64,000 nucleotides of DNA, taken from the NCBI GenBank assembly GCA_965637545.1, contig OZ281499.1:13392001-13456000 (forward strand), given 5' to 3'. Position 1 is the stretch's first letter. Each line of letters opens with the position of its first letter. The DNA is from Phallusia mammillata (Eukaryota). Positions 42,401-55,697 of the stretch are shown here, piece by piece. The notes below the pieces were generated by a model that did not search any database, was not told the origin of the DNA, and worked only from the letters and a program-made list of their open reading frames with translations. A program made the position numbers and the translations under genes.

Positions 42401-42722
42401 AACAACGATGTTAATGTTTCAAGATGATTCGAAAAATGCGTTATAAGTCAGATTTTTTTGTGTTTGTTGGTTGCAAGGTGCGGCTTGTCGTTTGTGGCAG
42501 CGATCGACGTGGAGCACGTCACAAGTTTGGACTAAGACAAGGTATTGGTAATTCGCCCACACAGACTAATTAACCAATCAGTGACGTCACGAGGGAAAAA
42601 ACCCAGGGGCTCTCTGGCTCTTTAGCCGGAGAGGGAGCCTGGAGAAGGTCTTGCACACAAAAAGGAAAGGCGCTCTCGATTCTATTGAAGTCCGGTATAT
42701 GCTTACCTTATTCAAATAGAAT
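39470..42722 (-). mobile_element. L1/Tx1-clade retrotransposon, copy 2 (rearranged, 3' end missing) with an SL-exon 5' end
   Basis: Frameshifted ORF1 (42373-41041; CKHCHERGHWATDC). EN start at 41037, deletion into RT (GVRQGCGLS), ~460-bp duplication (39599-40060 vs 40716-41172). SL exon at 42707-42722. Confidence 0.8.
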
Positions 42723-42781
42723 CCAACCAACCGTCCGCAGCTTTAGGGAACCGATTTGAAATGATTAAAGTCGAAAAAATA

Positions 42782-44484
42782 TTTTTTTTTTCAAAATCAA
42801 ACATTTTATTTGCAACAAAAAGTCAGCTAGCTCAACCCACCAAACAAAATCGGTTTTCTGCAACGACTGTACACTTTGCACACAAAAACACATCTTAAAC
42901 CTACAACATATCATGTCCAGTGAATATTGGCAGTGGACTATTTTGTTATTCAAGGATGGTATGCAAAAAAATCTTAAAAGAGTACCAACAAAAACATTTT
43001 GAATCGAACAAAAGGAACTAGGCAGTGGATTGTGAAGTTAAACTACATCTTCAACGCCAAGTTGGATCTCAACGTCATTTCAAGTTCACTTTCGGAGGTG
43101 TCTGGATCATTATCTATCACCACTGGGTGGGGTGTGTCGGGATTCATTTCCGTAGAGTTGACATCATTCATGCCTAAAATGTTCCTTGCAAATTCGATAG
43201 TTGCGACTTGTAACCCGAGACAAACACCAAGATATGGTTTTTGATTTTCTCTTGCCCATTTTGCTGCGGCAATTTTTCCTTCAACACCTCGATTTCCAAA
43301 TCCACCAGGGACCAAGATACCATTAGCTATGCAGATTTTTTTCCAAGCCTCACGGTATGACACTGGATCATTCACCACAGTTTCTTTCTCCAAATGTGTT
43401 GCCTCAATTATAGCTAAATCTAATCTTCTGTTCACTGCCAATGCTGCGTGCCTTAGAGCTTTAATGACCGACGCATAAGAATCTTCAAGTCTTGTGTATT
43501 TTCCTACCAGGGCAATTGTGCATTTCTTTTGGATTCTATCATATTTATCTGCAAGGTTTTTCCACTTCGTAAGAAGAAATCTTGTTGGATAAGTTGGCAA
43601 GCTCAAACGTTTCTTTAAATACGTTGATAGATTTTGTGCTTCCAGAACTGATGGAACATGGTATATCGAACTGACGTCATAAACATTGATCACCTGTTCA
43701 GGAGCTACATGACAAAAATTGGAAACTTTGTCTTTAACGGACATTTCGATTGGTGAGACGCTTCTACAAACAATAAGATCAGGAAATAAAGCAAGACCTC
43801 GTAAAGCTCGGACACTGTGTTGTGTCGGTTTCGTTTTCTGTTCTCCAGTTGCACTCGGCTGTGAAACGAGGCTGACATGAATGTTGCAGAAGTTTTCTGA
43901 TTTCACTCTGAATTGGAATTGACGAAACGCTTCCACAAAAGGCATCCCCTCAATGTCTCTTATCGTTCCACCCAACTCGATTATACAAACTTCCGGGGGT
44001 TCTTGATCACCGCTTACTGGAATCTTGGCGACTCGCTCCACCCATTCCATAATTGCGTCAGTAACATGGGGAACAACTTGTACAGTTTTTCCAAGGTAGC
44101 CCCCCTTTCTTTCTTTGCTGATGACATGTTGATAATTTTTTCCGGTTTGGATGTTGTTATCTTTGTGAAGCGTAACATTCAGAAATCGTTCATAATTTCC
44201 GAGATCCAAATCCACATCTCCGCCATAATCACACATAAATACATCACCATGTTCATATGGTGAAAACGTTCCCGCGTCGATATTTAAATAGGGATATATT
44301 TTAATGGCTGTGACACGAAGGCACATAATTTCAAAATTGTTCCCAAACTGCTTGAAATAACACCTTTTCCTATGCCACTTATAACACCACCAAAAACTAA
44401 AATGTATTTCATATTTTCAGAATCAGATTGCTTGGCATTCATAATGTTCTGTACTAAATGACAAATACCTCATTCAAATAGAAT
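42782..44484 (-). pseudogene. CTPS: Processed CTP synthase retrocopy of an SL-trans-spliced mRNA
   Basis: [17 protein letters not shown] (ATG at 44412), [42 protein letters not shown]. Intronless. SL (15/16 match) at 44469-44484, AATAAA at 42805-42810, A10 tail, 17-bp TSD GATTAAAGTCGAAAAAA. 1-bp frameshift near 44320 and an apparent internal deletion after PVVID. Confidence 0.95.
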
Positions 44485-44531
44485 GATTAAAGTCGAAAAA
44501 AAGTAACACCGATGATTAAAGTCGAAAAAAG

Positions 44532-44580
44532 TAACACCGAAGTGTTGAAATCGTGAAATCTTATCTTATTCAAATAGAAT
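44532..44580 (-). ncRNA. SL RNA gene copy with mutated splice donor (GT>AT)
   Basis: SL exon at 44565-44580 followed by ATAAG instead of GTAAG. Confidence 0.8.
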
Positions 44581-45721: not shown

Positions 45722-46247
45722 ACTGTTATAAGGTAACAGGCGGCTACCTGAAGCCCGTACATGCTTCATTTCAAGACACGGGTTATTTTTACGAGTGAAA
45801 TGGCAAGAAAAAATCCCCAGTCAGTCGGTGTCGCGCATGATATGTCCACTAGAGCAAAGTAGTGGCCAAAACAATGTGATACTAACTTTGTGCAGTGCTA
45901 CTAGAACATTGTGGCGTGTTTTCCACTTGCGCAGACCTGTTCATGGTGACTTTATCCGGAGCATTGCAAGCACATAGGTGTGGTAGCCACCCGGTAATTA
46001 CCGGGTTGGCTCAGGCGCGACTTGCTGGGGCCTGCAGGTCTGGCATAATTACCGAACATAATTAGCCGACCAGTCCGTGCAGCTGTGCGCTTCAGCTCAA
46101 CTCACCACGGGGAGCCTCATTGGCGCCCCCACGACTTTGTGTGAGGCCCAGCAACACTTCTAATGGGTAATAAAAAAAAACCAACCAACCGTCCGCAGCG
46201 TTAGGGAACCGATTTGAAATAATTAAAGTCGAAAAAAGTAACACCTT

Positions 46248-46278
<31 letters not shown>

Positions 46279-46881
46279 ATTGTAGAGGCACCTCCCCGCC
46301 TCAACAAGTGACGACCGACCGACAAAAACGGTGATATTTACTATTGTCGTCTCCTCATTAAAAATAAATTAAAATGCAGGCAGGCGGCAACAGCACGTGT
46401 ACTTAAAAGTTCAACGAAAAAAAGGAAAACAGGCTTGGCAACGAGAAAAAAAACGCGAAGGACAAGCATCGCACGTCGCGAACGGGATATGATTGCTATT
46501 GTCAACTAAGGGATTTCATATAAATTAATTTCATTTTTAAACAGGCAGGTGTAATAGTAATTTCAACTGTTGCCGCATTGAAAAAAAAAACATCACGAAA
46601 ATGTCAGATAGGACAGACATCGCACGTCGCGAATAGGGTAACTAATTGGTAATAACAACTAAGAGGTTTCATTTAACTAAAAGACATTTTTGGCAGGCAG
46701 GTATAGTACGCATTTCAGTTGTTACCACAAGAACAAACATAACATTGCAAGAAAACATATCATTGCGAGTGGAAAACTCTACGTGGCTGTTTGAGGTGCG
46801 TGGATTTTTAAAGTTTTAAGCCGAATTTTTGTTCTATTTCTGTTTCACCAAATTTCTGTTCAAAGTAATTTAAGTCCTTTT

Positions 46882-49800
46882 TTAAAAGAACAAAAATTTT
46901 TGCTGCAAATTCTTTGCGAAAGCGGCTTTATTGGCTAGGTATGAGTTGAGAAACTCGAGTTTTTGTTTTATTATTTGCAGACGCCAAATTGCAGTAGTTT
47001 TTATTACTAGTAACGATGTTTCCGAATCGAAGTGATTGTACAATTTGAGATTTGCAGAAGGATCGAATGGAGTTTGGAATTCTTTGAGGAACAGATCATT
47101 TAGGTAAGTTATGATTAAGTTCGGAATTGGGCAATTTGTAAGTAGGTGTTCAACATTGTCGTTGCGATTTTTGCAAAAATTACAGTATAGTTTACGGGGA
47201 TCACCATTTCTTAACCGCAAGAGTCCTGTTTGTCTATAAAAATCTCCCCATTTAAAAGCCTTATGGATGCTTAGGTAAGTGTATTGTCGTTCAAAATTAT
47301 TGAAAAAATATCTTATCTCCTTTTTCAGGAGTAAAGCATTTTTCCAACTGAAATCGGTGATGTGTGATGGCGTGCTATCTATTTCTATCGTTTTAATGAG
47401 CTCATAATAAAAGTGTCTGAGTTTTGCCTTTTGCCAATTGAAGTCATTGTTCTGTTCGATAAGATTTAAGTACGTAGCGTAGATTTTTTGCCAGTCTCTA
47501 TTGGGTTTCCATGCATGGGGTTTTAGGTTATCAAAAAACGTTGGTTTTATCTGTTTTAGCTTTGTACCTAGATTATATCTTGCCCATGCTTGCCAAATTT
47601 CGGTTATGTGTTCTGTTTTCAAAAAATCACGTATTTTTTCAAGATAGATTGCGTCAAGTTTTGTTTCCAGGTGTGGGACTTTAAGGCCGCCTTTTTGTAA
47701 GGTCGAAATGAGTTTCCGTCGGTTTAGTTGTTCGATCTTTCGCGGATGCCAAAAAAATTGGAAAATGATATATTTTAGTTGTTTGATATGGGCTGGGAAA
47801 GGTTTAACTGCACGTGCGAAAAAAAGAATTTTGGGATAAATTAGGGTATTAATTATGGCAATTTTTCCGGTAAAAGATAGTTTACGCGAGGAAAAGGTAG
47901 ATGTTATGTGTTTCGATTGTCTAATTACTGGATTCCAATTTTCATTGTGATCAAAGTTGTTGTTTTTGCATTTTACACCTAGTATTTTTGCACAGGTTTT
48001 AATATAGTCCGGGTATATATGCGTTAGGTCTGTTTGGAGGTTGCGTGAAATAGTAATGATTTCAGTCTTTTCCTGATTGATTTTCTGTCCGCTTGCATTT
48101 TGATACCGTTTCATTAAGTTAAAAATTGTACAGAGGGATTCTTTATTCGAAATTAGGAAGGTAGAGTCGTCTGCGTATTGTTGGATTTTTGTTTGTATGG
48201 TGCCGATTTTTAAACCGCTTATGTTAGTGTTTTTGTTTATTGCACATATCAGTGATTCAGCAACTGCCACGTAGAGTAACATTGACAGACCGCATCCCTG
48301 TCGTACACCTCTGATTATTTTTATTGGTTCTGTTAATTTTCCATTCACATTTACAGTGCTATTTATGTCGTTGTATAGAATTTTGATCCATTTTATCGTG
48401 TATTCATTTATTTTTAAATTTTCCATAATTTTGAACATAAAATCGTGGTCTATCGTATCGAAGGCCTTTTCAATGTCAACCATTACAAGCGCAAGTGGGG
48501 ACTGTTTTTCTTTACTATATTCTATTGCGGTTTTGATGTTGTAGTGAATGTGTTGGATGTATCTCTTATCGAGACCACATTTTTGTTCAATTGACAATTT
48601 TTCATTTAATTCATTCTGGAGGCGACGTGCAACGGTTTTACTGATAATTTTGTAGTCTGCATTAAGCAGCGATATTGGTCTCCAGTTTTTTATCAAGGTC
48701 TTATCTTTCTTTTTGGGGATAAGCTTAACTAACGCGTTCCGTAGCGATGTGGGTAGTTTTTGTGCCATGAAAATGTTATAAACTAGCTCAATGAAGTGCT
48801 CTTTTAAAGTTTGCCAAAAATGTAGATAAAATTCTACAGGGAGGCCATCGTTTCCGGGGGAAGAGTTTTTATTCATTTGGTTTTTGGACAATTCTAGTTC
48901 CTGGAGTGTTATTGGGGCGTCAATTGGGTTAGAGGGGTATGATTTCATTTGGGATACAAAGAAATTTTGGTCAGTATCATTTGTGATGTTTGGTTTCTGC
49001 CATAAGTCTGAGTAGAAAAGATGAACGTCGCCTAAGATTTTGTCTGCGTCGGTTTCAAGTTGATTATTTATTTTGAGCGAACGAATACTACAGCTTTCTT
49101 GTTTATGAGCCTCTATACTAAAAAAGGCTTTGTCAGGTTTTTCGTCGTCGCATTGGTCTTTTATTCTGGCTCGGATCTTAGCACCATGAAGGGTCGATTC
49201 GGTATTTGTTTTAAGCTTTTTTTGCAACTCCAATAGTTTAATGTTTACGTCTAGGTTTTGGGGGTCCATTTGCGCCATAATATCCTCAAACTGTTTTTGG
49301 GTTCTCGCTAGATCGCGTCTTTCAAGTTTTTTTAGATTAACCGCAAAGGTAATGGATTTTTTTCTGATTTTTCTTTTTAGAGTTTCCCACCATTCAGGGA
49401 CGGACGGGTAGTGCTCTTTTTCAGCTTCGAAGTCAAGAATTAGTTTTTTTATAAGCGCATTGTATTCGGGATTTGCTAAAAGCGCAAGATTCAATTTCCA
49501 TTGCGGTTTACCCCATCGTTTTCTTTTATCAAGGTTTAGACAAATGGTTGGTGCGAAGTTGTGATCGGAGAGCAAGGAGTGTTTATGGTTAGCGGAAATT
49601 AGTTGATGAAGCCTATTTATATTACAGTAAATCCGGTCAATTCTAGTTGAGGAACGCGCCGTGATTCGCGTATATATTTTTTTATTTGGTGCGAAAAAAC
49701 GGAAACAGTCTACGAAACCGTATCGTGTAGTCGCTTCAACCCATTGTTTAGCGTCGCAAGCTTTGTTAAAATTGGGATTTAGAGTATCCAACTGAGTTTC

Positions 49801-50271
49801 TACAAAATTAAAGTCTCCACCTATGATTTGGCAGTAGTTTCGGTTATTTGCTAAGGTTTCTGTAATTGCGTTTAAGAGAGTGGTTCTATTTTTCAAATTT
49901 TTTGCGCCAGAGGGGAGGTATACATTGCAGATTATATAGTTTAGGTTATTAATTGCAAAGGAGATTGTTTGTATTTTCTGATAGACCAAGATTTTATGTG
50001 TGATGTCGAGGTTGTGCACGAAGGATTTTTTTATAAAAATCAGAGTGCCATCGTCCACATTTTTTGGGGCATCAGCGCTGTCATTTCGCCAGATTGAATT
50101 AAAATAGAAATCGAAATTGTTGTTTTGAGCCCATAGCGTGAAAAGGTTTTGGTCAATTTGATGTATTTCTTGGAGCAATACTATGTCCGAGTCATCTGTT
50201 TTTAAGAATGCAGATAAGTCGTTCAGTTTGTGTGCAAGTCCATTAATGTTTATTGAGATAATGTGTAACAT
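46882..50271 (-). CDS. ORF2: APE endonuclease + reverse transcriptase + C-terminal CCHC, 1129 aa
   Basis: LLQEIH, GGDFN, RIDRIY, LSDH; WRPISLLNADYK, DIEKAFD, GVRQGCGLS, QYADD; CNFC...EHLLTNC. Confidence 0.95.
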   Translation of the reverse strand: MLHIISININGLAHKLNDLSAFLKTDDSDIVLLQEIHQIDQNLFTLWAQNNNFDFYFNSIWRNDSADAPKNVDDGTLIFIKKSFVHNLDITHKILVYQKIQTISFAINNLNYIICNVYLPSGAKNLKNRTTLLNAITETLANNRNYCQIIGGDFNFVETQLDTLNPNFNKACDAKQWVEATTRYGFVDCFRFFAPNKKIYTRITARSSTRIDRIYCNINRLHQLISANHKHSLLSDHNFAPTICLNLDKRKRWGKPQWKLNLALLANPEYNALIKKLILDFEAEKEHYPSVPEWWETLKRKIRKKSITFAVNLKKLERRDLARTQKQFEDIMAQMDPQNLDVNIKLLELQKKLKTNTESTLHGAKIRARIKDQCDDEKPDKAFFSIEAHKQESCSIRSLKINNQLETDADKILGDVHLFYSDLWQKPNITNDTDQNFFVSQMKSYPSNPIDAPITLQELELSKNQMNKNSSPGNDGLPVEFYLHFWQTLKEHFIELVYNIFMAQKLPTSLRNALVKLIPKKKDKTLIKNWRPISLLNADYKIISKTVARRLQNELNEKLSIEQKCGLDKRYIQHIHYNIKTAIEYSKEKQSPLALVMVDIEKAFDTIDHDFMFKIMENLKINEYTIKWIKILYNDINSTVNVNGKLTEPIKIIRGVRQGCGLSMLLYVAVAESLICAINKNTNISGLKIGTIQTKIQQYADDSTFLISNKESLCTIFNLMKRYQNASGQKINQEKTEIITISRNLQTDLTHIYPDYIKTCAKILGVKCKNNNFDHNENWNPVIRQSKHITSTFSSRKLSFTGKIAIINTLIYPKILFFARAVKPFPAHIKQLKYIIFQFFWHPRKIEQLNRRKLISTLQKGGLKVPHLETKLDAIYLEKIRDFLKTEHITEIWQAWARYNLGTKLKQIKPTFFDNLKPHAWKPNRDWQKIYATYLNLIEQNNDFNWQKAKLRHFYYELIKTIEIDSTPSHITDFSWKNALLLKKEIRYFFNNFERQYTYLSIHKAFKWGDFYRQTGLLRLRNGDPRKLYCNFCKNRNDNVEHLLTNCPIPNLIITYLNDLFLKEFQTPFDPSANLKLYNHFDSETSLLVIKTTAIWRLQIIKQKLEFLNSYLANKAAFAKNLQQKFLFF

Positions 50272-50274
50272 TGT

Positions 50275-51828
50275 TTAGTTAGTGCTTCTTTCTTCTTCTT
50301 GTGACTTGTTCTTCTTCTTTGGTCTTTTCTTTCCGGAGCTTGAGTTTCTTCTTTTCTTTTCTTTTTGTTGTGGTACAAAGAGCTCGTCTAGCTCTTTCTC
50401 GTTACTTCCTACTGTTTTTTCATTGGTTAAAGAATCTTCGTCGAGGGAAGAAGACTCGTCAGCCGTGAAGCTTATTCTTTTGGAAACAAGTTTGACCTTG
50501 CTGGTTATGTGCATCTGGGTGTCAGGGTGTTTTTTGGTTGGATAAGAAGGTGTAGAGGGTTTTGCCGAGTTTTTAATTGGAGATGCCGGTGTGCCATAGG
50601 TCGAGTTTGAGGATTTTGTAGAGGAGAGAAAATCAATTTGTTTGGGGTCCAACTCTGATTTATCCTCTGTTGAGAGCGAGAGTTTTCCAAAGTCTTGAGA
50701 AAGATTTGGAGAAGAGAGTTTTTCCATAGATTCGTCAGGAGGAAATTTTGAAGTCTGGGAACGAACTGGTGTGGAGGGTTTATCTTTAGGTACCTCGGGG
50801 GGAGGGTTTGCCGTCTGGGCACGGTTTGGAGTAGAAGTTTTGTCATCTGGTTCATCAGTGACCATATTTGAAGTCTGTGGACGATTTGTCGTTGTGTCCT
50901 TGGGCTCCTCACTATTTCTGTGAGAAGGTTGGCTAGATGCAAGATTTACTTCTGGGCTATCTTCAATAGGGATTGATTGATTAAGCTTGTCTCGTTTTTC
51001 TTCTTGTATTTCGATTTGCCTTATAAGAGGAGAGAGGTCATCAGGAGTAGTCCGGGGGTCCGGTTTGTCTTTTGGGGTAGATTTCTTAGGGCCCTTTGTT
51101 AGTTTCGGAAAGTTCCTGTCATACTCTTCGTCCGAGGACGATTCACCGTGAGAGGAAGAGATTGATGATCCATAGGGACAATTCTTTGCAAAGTGCCCTT
51201 GCTCTCCACAGATACGGCATTTGAGTTTTCTTGGGCACTGGTTAGCCCAGTGTCCCCTTTGGTTACATGTATTACACGCAGGTCCAAAGGTTTCACCGGG
51301 CTTGGCTATTTGTATGTCATGGCCATACATTTTTACCGTTAGAGGTATGTTGTCTAACTCTACTTCTTCCAAGAAAAGGTGGACATAGCCGTTTAAGATG
51401 TGAGGATACTGTCTATAGGTGAGAAAAGTATGTTTGTTGTAGATTCCCCATTCAAGAATTGATGCTGCAGTGGTAAAGTGTTTTGTTTTAAATTCGGCCG
51501 GGACCGGAAAGAGAGTCAGACGTGTCAAAGGTTTTGGTGGAGTAAAGCTCTGGAGTATAATCGTGTCATCACCATAGGTCCAGCAAAAACTGTTCTTCAG
51601 TTTGCGGTGCAAGAGTGTCAAATCGTGTGTGTGGTTCTCAAAGAAAGATATTTTGTAGATAGATCTGGGTCGGTTGATTACACGGCAGGCTTCTAACATG
51701 TCTTTATATTTTTCTAAAGGAAATCCTTTTTCGAAGAGATTCATGAAGGCATCAAACTTGTAGTAATCCGCTGTTGTGATTTGAATATGGAGAGACCGAT
51801 ATTCAAGCATGTACTTGTCGAAAGGCAT
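50275..51828 (-). CDS. ORF1 gag-like protein with two CCHC zinc knuckles (517 aa from the likely ATG)
   Basis: CNTCNQRGHWANQC and CRICGEQGHFAKNC; low-complexity S/P/T tail and basic C-terminus. Homologous to ORF1 of copies 1 and 2. Confidence 0.88.
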   Translation of the reverse strand: MPFDKYMLEYRSLHIQITTADYYKFDAFMNLFEKGFPLEKYKDMLEACRVINRPRSIYKISFFENHTHDLTLLHRKLKNSFCWTYGDDTIILQSFTPPKPLTRLTLFPVPAEFKTKHFTTAASILEWGIYNKHTFLTYRQYPHILNGYVHLFLEEVELDNIPLTVKMYGHDIQIAKPGETFGPACNTCNQRGHWANQCPRKLKCRICGEQGHFAKNCPYGSSISSSHGESSSDEEYDRNFPKLTKGPKKSTPKDKPDPRTTPDDLSPLIRQIEIQEEKRDKLNQSIPIEDSPEVNLASSQPSHRNSEEPKDTTTNRPQTSNMVTDEPDDKTSTPNRAQTANPPPEVPKDKPSTPVRSQTSKFPPDESMEKLSSPNLSQDFGKLSLSTEDKSELDPKQIDFLSSTKSSNSTYGTPASPIKNSAKPSTPSYPTKKHPDTQMHITSKVKLVSKRISFTADESSSLDEDSLTNEKTVGSNEKELDELFVPQQKEKKRRNSSSGKKRPKKKNKSQEEERSTN

Positions 51829-53378
51829 AGTGAACGATGTATGTAAGCAGATGACTCGGAGAAATAGAAGATAAGCAGAAGTGGAACCTACAGGGATGCG
51901 GTCTGGTAAGTACGGACGAGAAGGAAATTGAAAGGTACTGTTGTAAATCTGAATTAAATTATTTTTTTGATTTCTATGTTTTGGCTGTTTAGGGGAAGTC
52001 CCTTGACTGTTGTCGCAAAACAGGGAGTTTCCCGAAAGAAAGGCCAGAGAACAGATGGACAAAGGGGAATACCCTTTTACTTGCCGAAGACAAAGGGGAA
52101 CTCCCTCCACGAAAACAAGATCTTGGGGGGGACGAAGAGTAGAGCAGCAAGACCAATTAAGCACGAAGACAAATGCGCTTAATTGGTCGGTAAGGGGGGA
52201 AGTCCCAGAGAGCACCTCAGGCACGGGCCTAGGAGGTGGTCAGTGGGGCTTTCCCTAACACACACAAAAAAAGAACAAAGGTACAACTAGCGAAACGCCG
52301 CCGTCGCAGCTCTTATAAGAAAAGCGTAAACAGGGACGTGGCGCTAGGGGGCAAACAAAAAAAGAAAACAAAATGGCGCTACAAAGGTTTAAGACGTGTT
52401 AGATTACCAAGAATTACAACCAAAGGTCACTAGAGGGCCTTACGGGCCAGAAGAGGGCGTTACCCGGTTTGAGGCCTTAAGGGCAAAAAGTTACAGCAGA
52501 AAAGCCTTAGAGGCTCTTAAGTCAGGTTACTAGTTAGTTTTTACCACCAGAGGACCTTTGAGATCCGGTTATAGTTAATTTCAAATTACAGTTACCAGTT
52601 TACAAGAGAACTAAGGTTTATTGGTTACACGGTTAGAAAAAAAGGTATAATAAAACAAACAAACAACAGCCCTGCAAGCGCCTTTGCGCACTTACTGTAC
52701 AAAAAACAAAGTAAATAACACTGCCTGCCTGAAACAACTAAGGGTGAAACGCACCGATAAACATGCAAGAGTAAAACCACACCAAGCAACGTGCAATGCT
52801 TTCCGATTCTATTGAAGTCGGGTATGATGCTTACCTTATTCAAATAGAATACTGTTATAAGGTAACAGGCGGCTACCTGAAGACCGTACATGCTTTATTT
52901 CAAGACACGGGATATTTTTACGAGTGAAATGGCAAGAAAAACATCCCCAGTCAGTTGATGTCGCGCATGATATGTCCACTAGAGCAAAGTAGTGGCCAAA
53001 ACAATGTGATACTAACTTTGTGCAGTGCTACTAGAACATTGTGGCGTGTTTTCCACTTGCGCAGACCTGTTCATGGTGACTTTATCCGGAGCATTGCAAG
53101 CACACAGGTGTGGTAGCCACCCGGTAATTACCGGGTTGGCTCAGCCGCGACTTGCTGGGGCCTGCAGGTCTGGCATAATTACCGAACATAATTAGCCGAC
53201 CAGTCCGTGCAGCTGTGCGCTTCAGCTCAACTTCTGCACCACGGGGAGCCTCATTGGCGCCCCCACGACTTTGTGTGAGGCCCAGCAACACTTCTAATGG
53301 GTAATAAAAAAAAAAACCAACCAACCAACCGTCCGCAGCGTTAGGGAACCGATTTGAAATAATTAAAGTCGAAAAAAG

Positions 53379-54577: not shown

Positions 54578-55697
54578 ACTGTTATAAGGTAACAGGCGGC
54601 TACCTGGAGACCGTACATGCTTTATTTCAAGACACGGGATATTTTTACGAGTGAAATGGCAAGAAAAACATCCCCAGTCAGTTGATGTCGCGCATGATAT
54701 GTCCACTAGAGCAAAGTAGTGGCCAAAACAATGTGATACTAACTTTGTGCAGTGCTACTGTAACATTGTGGCGTGTTTTCCAATTGCGCAGACCTGTTCA
54801 TTTTGAGTTTATTTGAAGCATTGCAGGCACATAGGTGTGGTAGCCACCCGGTAATTACCGGATTGGCTCCGGCGCGACTTGCTGGGGCCAGCAGGTCTGG
54901 CATAATTACCGAACCTAATTAGCCGATCAGCCCTTGCAGCTGTGCGCTTCAGCTCAACTTCTGGATCACGGGGAGCCTCATTGGCGCCCCCACGGCTTTG
55001 TGTAAGGCCCAGCAACACTTCTAATGGGTAATAAAAAAACAAACCTACCAACCAACCGTCCGCAGCGTTAGGCAACCGATTTGAAATAATTAAAGTCGAA
55101 AAAAAGTAACACCGAAGTGGCATCTTTTGTTTATTGTAACGCCAATAAACGAAGCGATACGAAAAACTCAATGCGATAATAAAAACAAACAACGAAATCA
55201 TCAGGCCGATGAATTTCGGGCACGTCACGCCTGACAACGCGGTGCCGTTACCCCTCGGGGTTGGTCAATAAGAGAAGAAGAAAGTCAGGGCCATTACTCC
55301 CCGCCTTGGCGGATATGCTTGGGCCCTGCGAGAAGCGGCGCGAAGTGAAAAGAAAAAGGTAAAGACGTCACGAGTACCCGACATAGAAATCGTAGTACGA
55401 ATAACGAAAAATAAAACACGCACGCACGAACGAATATAAAAAACAAAAAAAAATGACGTCACCGGTACACGACATAAAAATCGTAGTACAAGAGACACGC
55501 ACGAGAAAATAGAGAGCGAAACAAACAAGGGTCACGTGAAGCACGCAAGAAAACAAAAACGGTTGAGAATTGTAAGGCAAAAAGACAGGGTCTTCGCTCC
55601 CCGCCGACGACGGGTATGCATTGACCCTGGGAGAAGGGCGAAGAGGGAAGGTAGAAAGGAGCATTGCATACACTACCGATCTCAAACATTAATTTTA

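What the first reader, a model, noticed from the sequence alone, without database searches (positions are those of the whole stretch)
42763..44501. Full-length SL-trans-spliced CTP synthase mRNA retroposed into the SL gene array
Seen: an intronless CTPS copy with SL (15/16) precisely at its 5' end, AATAAA plus poly(A), and a 17-bp TSD covering SL gene nt +51 to +67. It has the same orientation as, and lies within 15 bp of, the retrotransposon junctions. This is direct DNA evidence that CTPS mRNA is trans-spliced in the germ line. Inference: the SL-targeting machinery mobilises host mRNAs in trans, so SL arrays may be sinks for SL-capped retrocopies.
Basis: partly seen in the sequence, partly recalled or inferred. 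Interest (0 to 1): 0.8.

Follow-up and report, generated by a model that had tools for sequence, protein, structure and literature searches.

The report
Spliced-leader-tagged CTP synthase retrocopy in SL gene
A dead, intron-free copy of a CTP synthase mRNA, still carrying the 16-base spliced leader and a poly(A) tail, sits just behind a sea-squirt spliced-leader RNA gene at the spot where a local family of jumping genes (LINEs) also inserts. This suggests those LINEs copied a host mRNA into their own preferred target, but it is the only such case found.

Summary
On the minus strand, 44484 to 42782 is an intronless CTP synthase (CTPS) copy. It starts with the ascidian spliced leader (SL, 15/16) and ends 16 nt after AATAAA in a 10-A tail. 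A 17-19 bp target-site duplication (SL gene +51 to +67/69) flanks it.

It is complete only at its two ends. It has a 1-nt frameshift and an in-frame 408-nt internal deletion, so it is a pseudogene.

The intron-bearing paralogue A (same contig, 12 Mb away) has a polypyrimidine-AG acceptor exactly where the SL joins. An RNA contig shows the SL spliced there. The true source is a second lineage, B (95.7% identical against 92.0% for A). B is now 5'-truncated, so its own acceptor cannot be checked.

The 3' junction falls inside the 8-nt zone used, in the same orientation, by at least four independent poly(A) LINE insertions in SL genes. Mobilisation in trans by that LINE is likely but rests on one case.

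The idea that SL arrays are a sink for such retrocopies is not supported. CTPS is the only host mRNA among the 8 poly(A) junctions found by two site-restricted pattern searches. About 24 of 29 LINE copies lie outside arrays, and 473 SL 16-mers are dispersed. The scan has already noted SL-headed retrocopies elsewhere in this genome.

The parts
44552..44580 (-). Host SL RNA gene. The SL exon is 44580-44565. Its splice donor is mutated (AAG|AT instead of AAG|GT). This is the first unit at the edge of the C6-type array.
44512..44540 (-). First copy of a 28/29-nt tandem duplication of SL gene +42 to +69. Its left edge coincides with the LINE 3' junction site.
   Evidence: family D4. One search shows the duplication junction is unique in the genome.
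44483..44511 (-). Second copy of the 28/29-nt duplication. It contains the upstream target-site duplication (44501-44485, or to 44483 if the shared AT is counted).
44469..44484 (-). Spliced leader, 15/16 (A to G at SL position 14), fused directly to the CTPS 5' UTR.
   Evidence: SL identity from PMC1488885 and PMC7986045.
43043..44468 (-). CTPS 5' UTR and coding remnant. The canonical ATG is at 44412-44410 and an extra in-frame ATG at 44442-44440. A 1-nt deletion (frameshift) lies within 44325-44314. The in-frame 408-nt deletion has its junction at 43111/43110. The stop codon is 43045-43043. Pfam finds CTP_synth_N plus the first half of the glutamine amidotransferase (GATase) domain.
42792..43042 (-). 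3' UTR, colinear with the last exon of loci A and B. AATAAA is at 42810-42805.
42780..42791 (-). Poly(A) tail of 10 A (42791-42782) plus 2 filler bases, TA (42781-42780).
42761..42779 (-). Downstream target-site duplication (SL gene +51 to +69). The SL unit then continues to about +107.
42701..42732 (-). Next feature downstream: a LINE 5' end that begins with the exact SL plus GTAAGC. It is joined to SL-unit position about +107, away from any SL promoter.
46228..46253 (-). For comparison: the 3' junction of the full-length poly(A) LINE (46246-52850). Its poly(A) is followed by SL gene +43 onward, 8 nt upstream of the CTPS 3' junction and in the same orientation.
55106..55124 (-). For comparison: the 3' junction of a second LINE family without a poly(A) tail, at SL gene +37/39.

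Best explanation
This is a processed pseudogene. A mature CTP synthase mRNA from a paralogue of the B lineage was reverse-transcribed end to end and inserted just 3' of an SL RNA gene. The mRNA was SL trans-spliced at its first acceptor and polyadenylated 16 nt after AATAAA.

Shown:
- The copy has no introns.
- The SL sits at the exact acceptor position.
- The poly(A) tail sits at the parental cleavage site.
- A target-site duplication flanks the copy.
- The copy is dead: a frameshift, and loss of 136 codons including the His-Glu half of the glutamine amidotransferase (GATase) domain.

Inferred:
- Insertion was by target-primed reverse transcription, with a nick made by the endonuclease of the poly(A)-tailed APE+RT LINE family. 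That family repeatedly inserts, in the same orientation, at +43 to +51 of SL genes. In other words, the LINE acted in trans on a host mRNA, as L1 does in mammals.
- The 408-nt deletion has no splice-site signals and 1 nt of microhomology. It is best read as a template jump by the reverse transcriptase or a later deletion.
- The unique 28-nt tandem duplication of +42 to +69 next to the insert suggests an earlier abortive cut at the same site.
For: - No introns: colinear with 13 exon pieces of locus A.
- Acceptor: locus A reads polypyrimidine-AG immediately before the first base shared with the retrocopy.
- RNA evidence: a contig of run X1 ends at that acceptor in the first 13 bases of the SL (its last 3 fit the genome too), preceded by 6 other letters that I take (from memory) to be the end of a template-switch oligo. 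Spliced contigs with GT..AG introns show these runs are RNA.
- 3' end: homology to loci A and B ends at the poly(A) tail.
- Duplication: 17-19 bp.
- LINE junctions in SL genes, all on the gene strand: poly(A) followed by +43 (window copy, L050), by +44 (L051), by a T run at about +48 to +51 (L047-L049), and the equivalent site in a C3-type gene (L082).
- The neighbouring elements encode APE plus RT and a CCHC ORF1.
- Rough chance estimate (my arithmetic): about 3000 SL units x 9 nt x 1 strand is about 6e-5 of the genome.
- The duplication junction is unique in the genome.
- DNA runs from 3-4 studies hold 0.81-0.92 of the retrocopy's sampled words. It is therefore neither an assembly artefact nor private to one animal.
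Against: - Only one host-mRNA insertion of this kind was found, so the link to the LINE is circumstantial and was noticed after the fact.
- The LINE family is not strictly site-specific. About 24 of 29 copies with the conserved 3' motif lie at unrelated sites.
- LINE copies in the array show no comparable duplication. One has its 5' junction at +44 and its 3' junction at about +48. Another is fused at the SL exon.
- The duplication starts with a T run, which cannot pair with a poly(A) tail, and 2 filler bases are present.
- The true source gene (B lineage) has lost its 5' half, so its own acceptor cannot be inspected.
Confidence: 0.7

Rival explanations
1. It is the same processed pseudogene, but a different, non-specific LINE inserted it and it landed in the SL unit by chance. 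The match to the LINE junction zone is coincidence.
For: - The poly(A) LINE family itself inserts mostly outside arrays.
- Other APE+RT elements are present in the window.
- The scan's notes report SL-headed retrocopies at non-array sites (not checked here).
- The duplication and filler bases differ from the LINE's own junctions.
Against: - Same strand, and within 0-8 nt of at least four independent LINE 3' junctions.
- The target zone makes up roughly 6e-5 of the genome.
- The left edge of the adjacent unique 28-nt duplication is at +42, next to the LINE junction at +43.
Confidence: 0.2
2. The 5' 16-mer does not come from trans-splicing. Either the lost B-lineage gene encoded it in cis, or the reverse transcriptase switched template onto an SL RNA or a local SL gene transcript.
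For: - The 5' half of locus B is absent, so a cis-encoded SL cannot be excluded directly.
- BLAST extends the locus A alignment weakly into the 16-mer.
- The insert lies in an SL array, where SL RNA is made.
Against: - The 16 bases upstream in locus A match the SL at 6/16, against 15/16 for the retrocopy.
- The weak BLAST extension reflects a T-rich tract plus AG.
- RNA shows the SL joined at exactly this acceptor in locus A.
- A template switch would have to start precisely at SL position 16 and at the acceptor. No SL intron bases (GTAAG) are present.
Confidence: 0.05
3. The copy is a functional retrogene encoding a shortened CTPS-like protein.
For: - A 427-codon frame remains open, and the 408-nt deletion is in frame.
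- Some RNA runs hold 0.10-0.21 of its sampled words.
Against: - A 1-nt deletion separates the start codon and the ATP-binding N-terminus from the rest.
- The deletion removes the QFHPE region of the GATase domain.
- At about 4% divergence from B, roughly one stop codon would be expected by chance, so the open frame is not evidence of constraint.
- The RNA words may come from paralogues.
Confidence: 0.03

Closest known systems
LINE-1-mediated processed pseudogenes of mammals (Esnault et al. 2000, cited from memory)
   Same: An intronless cDNA copy of a mature mRNA with a poly(A) tail and a target-site duplication. It carries the insertion-site signature of the LINE that supplied the endonuclease and reverse transcriptase in trans.
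   Different: The site signature here is a position in an SL RNA gene (+43 to +51), not TT/AAAA. The duplication starts with T, not A. The 5' end carries a trans-spliced leader.
DinoSL-tagged retrogenes of dinoflagellates (PMC6050394, PMC5585692, PMC12014239)
   Same: A spliced leader encoded in DNA at the 5' end shows that the gene copy came from a mature trans-spliced mRNA.
   Different: This is a metazoan (ascidian) with a 16-nt SL. It is a single SL with no tandem relict SLs at this locus, the copy is a pseudogene, and it is inserted into an SL gene array.
Non-LTR retrotransposons specific for SL genes: SLACS/CZAR/CRE of trypanosomatids and NeSL-1 of nematodes (reviewed in PMC4640811)
   Same: Retroelements that use tandem SL RNA genes as a safe multicopy target, in a fixed orientation.
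   Different: Those elements encode a restriction-like endonuclease and insert inside the SL exon. The elements here encode an APE-type endonuclease plus a CCHC ORF1, insert 3' of the exon at +37 to +51, carry poly(A) tails, and also occur at many non-SL sites. No host-mRNA retrocopy at the target of the known families came up in my searches.
APE-type target-specific LINEs of the Tx1 and R1 clades (PMC4640811)
   Same: APE endonuclease plus RT, and repeated insertion at one position of a multicopy small-RNA gene.
   Different: Clade membership of the local LINE was not tested here. Its specificity is a preference, not a rule.

Membership tests
Processed pseudogene (LINE-mediated retrocopy) | Colinear with the spliced mRNA of an intron-bearing parent, with all introns absent | tested here: met
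   13 exon pieces of locus A abut in the copy, so 12 introns are missing.
Processed pseudogene (LINE-mediated retrocopy) | Poly(A) tail at the parental cleavage site, not encoded in the parent | tested here: met
   Homology to loci A and B ends 16 nt after AATAAA. The copy then has 10 A, whereas the parents read on with unrelated sequence.
Processed pseudogene (LINE-mediated retrocopy) | Target-site duplication flanking the insert | tested here: met
   17-19 bp, SL gene +51 to +67/69, T7 against T6.
Processed pseudogene (LINE-mediated retrocopy) | Disabling lesions or no sign of constraint | tested here: met
   1-nt frameshift and loss of 136 codons of the GATase domain.
SL-tagged retrocopy (dinoflagellate-type evidence of trans-splicing) | SL in the DNA exactly where the parent has a trans-splice acceptor, and not encoded in the parent | tested here: met
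   Met for paralogue A: acceptor position, 6/16 match of the upstream bases to the SL, and an RNA contig with the SL at that acceptor. Could not be tested for the B-lineage source, whose 5' half is missing.
SL-tagged retrocopy (dinoflagellate-type evidence of trans-splicing) | Recycling: tandem relict SLs from repeated rounds of retroposition | tested here: not met
   There is a single SL at this locus. Tandem partial SLs were seen only in an unrelated dispersed repeat (L029).
Insertion made by the LINE that prefers SL genes | 3' junction at the LINE's own nick position, in the same orientation | tested here: met
   The CTPS flank starts at +51 (or +48). LINE flanks start at +43, +43, +44, about +48 to +51, and the equivalent site in a C3-type gene. 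All are on the gene strand.
Insertion made by the LINE that prefers SL genes | 5' junction and duplication of the same form as the LINE's own insertions | tested here: not met
   LINE copies join at the SL exon, at +44 or at about +107. None shows a 17-19 bp duplication.
Insertion made by the LINE that prefers SL genes | The LINE endonuclease cleaves SL-gene DNA at +42 to +51 | not testable with these tools
   Needs a biochemical nicking assay.
Strictly target-specific non-LTR retrotransposon (as a description of the neighbouring LINE) | Nearly all copies at one target sequence | tested here: not met
   Of the 29 copies with the conserved 3' motif, about 24 lie outside the two arrays. The 19 non-array copies I read have unrelated flanks.

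The most novel reading that the evidence does not exclude
The LINE's own RNA begins with the SL. SL-headed RNAs may therefore be privileged templates for it: its machinery could recognise or retain the SL 5' end, so that trans-spliced host mRNAs are preferentially copied and delivered to SL genes. That would link trans-splicing to a directed route of gene retroposition.
Probability: 0.08. Interest if true: 0.8.

Novelty: new member of a known kind. Interest (0 to 1): 0.5.

Why it matters
The locus is a clean molecular fossil. It shows that a complete, SL-capped, polyadenylated mRNA was present where heritable reverse transcription took place, and that the cDNA reached the first bases of the leader.

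Its position ties a host retrocopy to one identifiable LINE family through the insertion site. In most animals outside mammals the source of retrocopies is only guessed at.

It also preserves the 5' half of a CTPS paralogue that has since been lost from the genome.

It does not show that SL arrays collect retrocopies.

Tried and rejected
- Alternative splicing as the cause of the internal gap: rejected. The junction lies inside two exons, has no GT or AG, and shows 1 nt of microhomology.
- A variant SL gene with G at position 14: no support. All 34 genomic copies of that variant are scattered, and apart from the retrocopy's own SL none lies at the array coordinates I know. Their flanks were not read. 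A point change in or after the copy is simpler.
- Treating the 473 dispersed SL 16-mers as classical retrocopies:
  - In 20 sampled loci I found no duplication next to an A-rich tail within 5 kb.
  - None has a long ORF after the SL.
  - About 10 of 23 carry a CTGATGA...GAAA hammerhead-like motif.
  - So they cannot be counted as host retrocopies.
- Rfam on 17 of those loci and on the whole window: only weak, sub-threshold microRNA-hairpin matches on one locus (L032); nothing on the window.
- Folding of the SL RNA: not distinguishable from shuffled sequence (z -0.69), so I make no structural claim about the target.
- Yeats et al. 2010 on Ciona SL genes and pseudogenes is not held in the library.
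- Literature searches found no tunicate SL-tagged retrocopy.

Full report
**Setting.**
- The window is contig C6:13392001-13456000 of a 240-Mb assembly.
- The 16-mer ATTCTATTTGAATAAG is the spliced leader (SL) of Ciona intestinalis (PMC1488885 and PMC7986045).
- It occurs 9 times in the window within one mismatch, all on the minus strand. By chance 0.02 would be expected.
- Seven of the nine head SL RNA genes in units of about 570 bp. Here the unit and the SL RNA intron differ from the 264-bp Ciona unit, so this is another ascidian with the same leader.
- The genome holds 3034 copies of SL plus GTAAG. These are of at least two gene types. One is a C3-type in 553-bp units. The other is the C6-type of this window, with 171 intact copies of the target segment, all in one array whose first unit is the one studied here.

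**The observation.** Read on the minus strand, the order is:
- an SL gene (exon 44580-44565, donor mutated to AT);
- its downstream sequence to +69;
- a second copy of +42 to +69;
- the SL-like 16-mer (44484-44469, 15/16);
- a CTP synthase (CTPS) 5' UTR and coding sequence;
- a stop codon at 43045-43043;
- a 250-nt 3' UTR with AATAAA at 42810-42805;
- ten A (42791-42782) and the filler TA;
- SL gene +51 onward again.

Pfam finds CTP_synth_N (E 1.7e-95) and the first half of the glutamine amidotransferase (GATase) domain. It differs only in a T run (T7 against T6).

**Parents.**
- The genome has two other CTPS loci, both on the same contig.
- Locus A (C6:25556993-25565529) is a complete gene. 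The retrocopy aligns to 13 exon pieces of it that abut in the copy, so 12 introns are missing.
- Locus B (C6:22979047-22984928) holds only the 3' half, with the last exon displaced upstream and one exon split by an insertion.
- Over about 820 shared bases the retrocopy is 95.7% identical to B and 92.0% to A. A and B are 92.9% identical to each other.
- The source was therefore a B-lineage gene that was still whole at the time. The retrocopy now preserves its lost 5' half.
- About 4% divergence, one changed SL base and a T6/T7 difference in the duplication all fit an insertion that is not recent.
- DNA runs from three or four other studies hold 0.81-0.92 of its sampled words. It is therefore real and widespread in the species.

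**Is the SL from trans-splicing?**
- In locus A the first base shared with the retrocopy is preceded by a T-rich tract ending in AG, which is a normal acceptor.
- The 16 bases upstream match the SL at 6/16, against 15/16 for the retrocopy.
- I laid contigs of four public runs on the 5' end of locus A. They skip three introns with GT..AG ends, so the runs are RNA.
- One contig of run X1 ends at the acceptor and continues with letters that, reverse-complemented, read TACGGG followed by the first 13 bases of the SL. The last three SL bases fit the genome as well.
- Two other runs show the same acceptor spliced in cis to an exon 663 bp upstream. Its last bases match the loose end seen in run X5.
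- So the acceptor takes either the SL or an upstream exon, and the retrocopy records the SL form.

**Not full-length inside.**
- Relative to A and B, one T is missing near 44318-44325, which shifts the frame after residue 30 or so.
- At 43111/43110 the copy jumps from the middle of one exon to 20 nt inside the last exon.
- The skipped mRNA is 408 nt (136 codons) and the jump is in frame. It removes the part of the GATase domain that carries the QFHPE motif.
- The junction has no splice signals and 1 nt of microhomology. A template jump during reverse transcription or a later deletion fits better than alternative splicing.

**Link to the LINEs.**
- The window holds a 6.6-kb element (46246-52850) with an ORF1 bearing CCHC knuckles and an ORF2 with APE and RT domains. 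It also holds further APE+RT elements.
- The poly(A) tail of the 6.6-kb element is followed by SL gene +43 onward.
- A pattern search for nine or more A within 14 nt of the C6-type segment found 7 sites, all in this array and all on the gene strand. One is CTPS and six are LINE 3' ends.
- The six LINE flanks start at +43 (two copies), at +44 (one), and, in three copies, at a T run at about +48 to +51, where CTPS also joins.
- Those three copies are 99.6-99.9% identical over 5 kb including flanks. They are one event copied by segmental duplication.
- The same search for the C3-type gene found one site, again a LINE at the equivalent position.
- A second LINE family without poly(A) ends at +37/39.
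- At least four independent poly(A) LINE insertions therefore fall in an 8-nt zone in one orientation, and the CTPS 3' junction lies inside it. By my arithmetic that zone, over all SL units and on one strand, is about 6e-5 of the genome.
- The 28/29-nt tandem duplication beside the insert spans +42 to +69. Its left edge is next to the LINE junction (+43), its right edge is the CTPS 5' junction, and its junction sequence occurs nowhere else in the genome. I read it as the scar of an earlier staggered cut at the same site, but this is inference.

**Limits of that link.**
- The LINE is not strictly site-specific. Of 29 copies with its conserved 3' motif, about 24 lie outside the two arrays. The 19 of them whose 3' flanks I read end in poly(A) at unrelated sequences.
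- Its own insertions in the array have other 5' junctions: at the SL exon, at +44 and at about +107. None has a 17-19 bp duplication.
- The CTPS duplication begins with T, so the primer could not have paired with the poly(A) tail.

**The 'sink' idea.**
- Among 8 poly(A) junctions in SL units, CTPS is the only host mRNA.
- No other SL-headed insert lies within 31 nt after the C6-type segment.
- By contrast, 473 exact SL 16-mers not followed by G are scattered over all large contigs, with 0 in the reversed-pattern control.
- In samples of 20 and 23 such sites the flanks are mostly different. About 10 of 23 carry CTGATGA...GAAA a few bases after the SL. This agrees with the scan's note of SL-headed hammerhead repeats (s1-408599).
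- Three sites belong to a repeat with tandem partial SLs. The rest are unique, but none has a clear tail, a duplication or a long ORF.
- The scan's notes also list SL-headed kinesin and NEK8-like retrocopies on other contigs (s1-375384, s1-375416, s1-395739). I did not check them.
- SL-headed DNA copies are therefore common outside arrays. Nothing shows that arrays collect them.

**Verdict.**
- The locus is a well-preserved processed pseudogene of a trans-spliced CTPS mRNA. It was very probably placed by the LINE that prefers this spot in SL genes.
- In kind it is an ordinary retrocopy. Its interest lies in the SL tag in a chordate relative and in an insertion site that names the likely retrotransposon.

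Noticed in passing
window 44483-44540: A 28/29-nt tandem duplication of SL gene +42 to +69 lies directly upstream of the retrocopy. Its junction sequence is unique in the genome. It may be the scar of an abortive staggered cut.
   Followed up: partly
window 44560-44580: The SL gene that hosts the insert has a mutated splice donor (AAG|ATAAG). It is the first unit at the edge of the C6-type array.
   Followed up: partly
window 52806-52850; L072 (C3:11113300-11119200): The full-length LINE begins with the SL plus GTAAGCATCATAC. That is the start of the C3-type SL gene, not of the C6-type gene it sits in. The LINE RNA therefore carries about 29 nt of another SL gene type at its 5' end. Copies outside arrays (L074, L075) keep it too.
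   Followed up: partly
L025:2515-3200 (C6:25565514-25566199): The first acceptor of CTPS locus A is used both for SL trans-splicing (run X1) and for cis-splicing to an exon 663 bp upstream (runs X5, X8).
   Followed up: partly
C6:22979047-22984928 (L024, L026): CTPS locus B is a 5'-truncated, rearranged paralogue. Its last exon lies upstream of the other exons. One exon is split by about 1.1 kb, with an 11-nt overlap at the two edges that looks like a transposon insertion.
   Followed up: partly
genome-wide; samples L027-L046, L052-L071: 473 exact SL 16-mers not followed by G are dispersed on all large contigs. About 10 of 23 sampled carry a hammerhead-like CTGATGA...GAAA motif just after the SL.
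   Followed up: partly
L029-L031 / L054-L056 (C1:1.15, 1.55, 2.18 Mb): A repeat family with two or three tandem, partly truncated SL copies at its head, followed by an ORF of up to 142 aa. It resembles the relict-SL stacks of dinoflagellate retrogenes.
   Followed up: no
L032 / L057 (C1:2319417): A head-to-head palindrome of SL plus hammerhead-like motif, with a forward and a partial reversed SL at the centre. It gives only spurious microRNA-hairpin hits in Rfam.
   Followed up: no
genome-wide: The same A-to-G variant of the SL (GAATGAG) occurs at 34 scattered sites. That seems many for a single specific substitution.
   Followed up: no
C6:13468419-13558415: A recurring 1524-bp spacing between target segments in the array points to a small insert, or to degenerate units, copied along with segmental duplications of 18 and 62 kb. 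The content was not read.
   Followed up: no
L081, L085: Two LINE copies outside arrays are flanked by GGTGTTAAC, which resembles the SL-gene target GGTGTTAC. This hints at a short sequence preference of the endonuclease.
   Followed up: no
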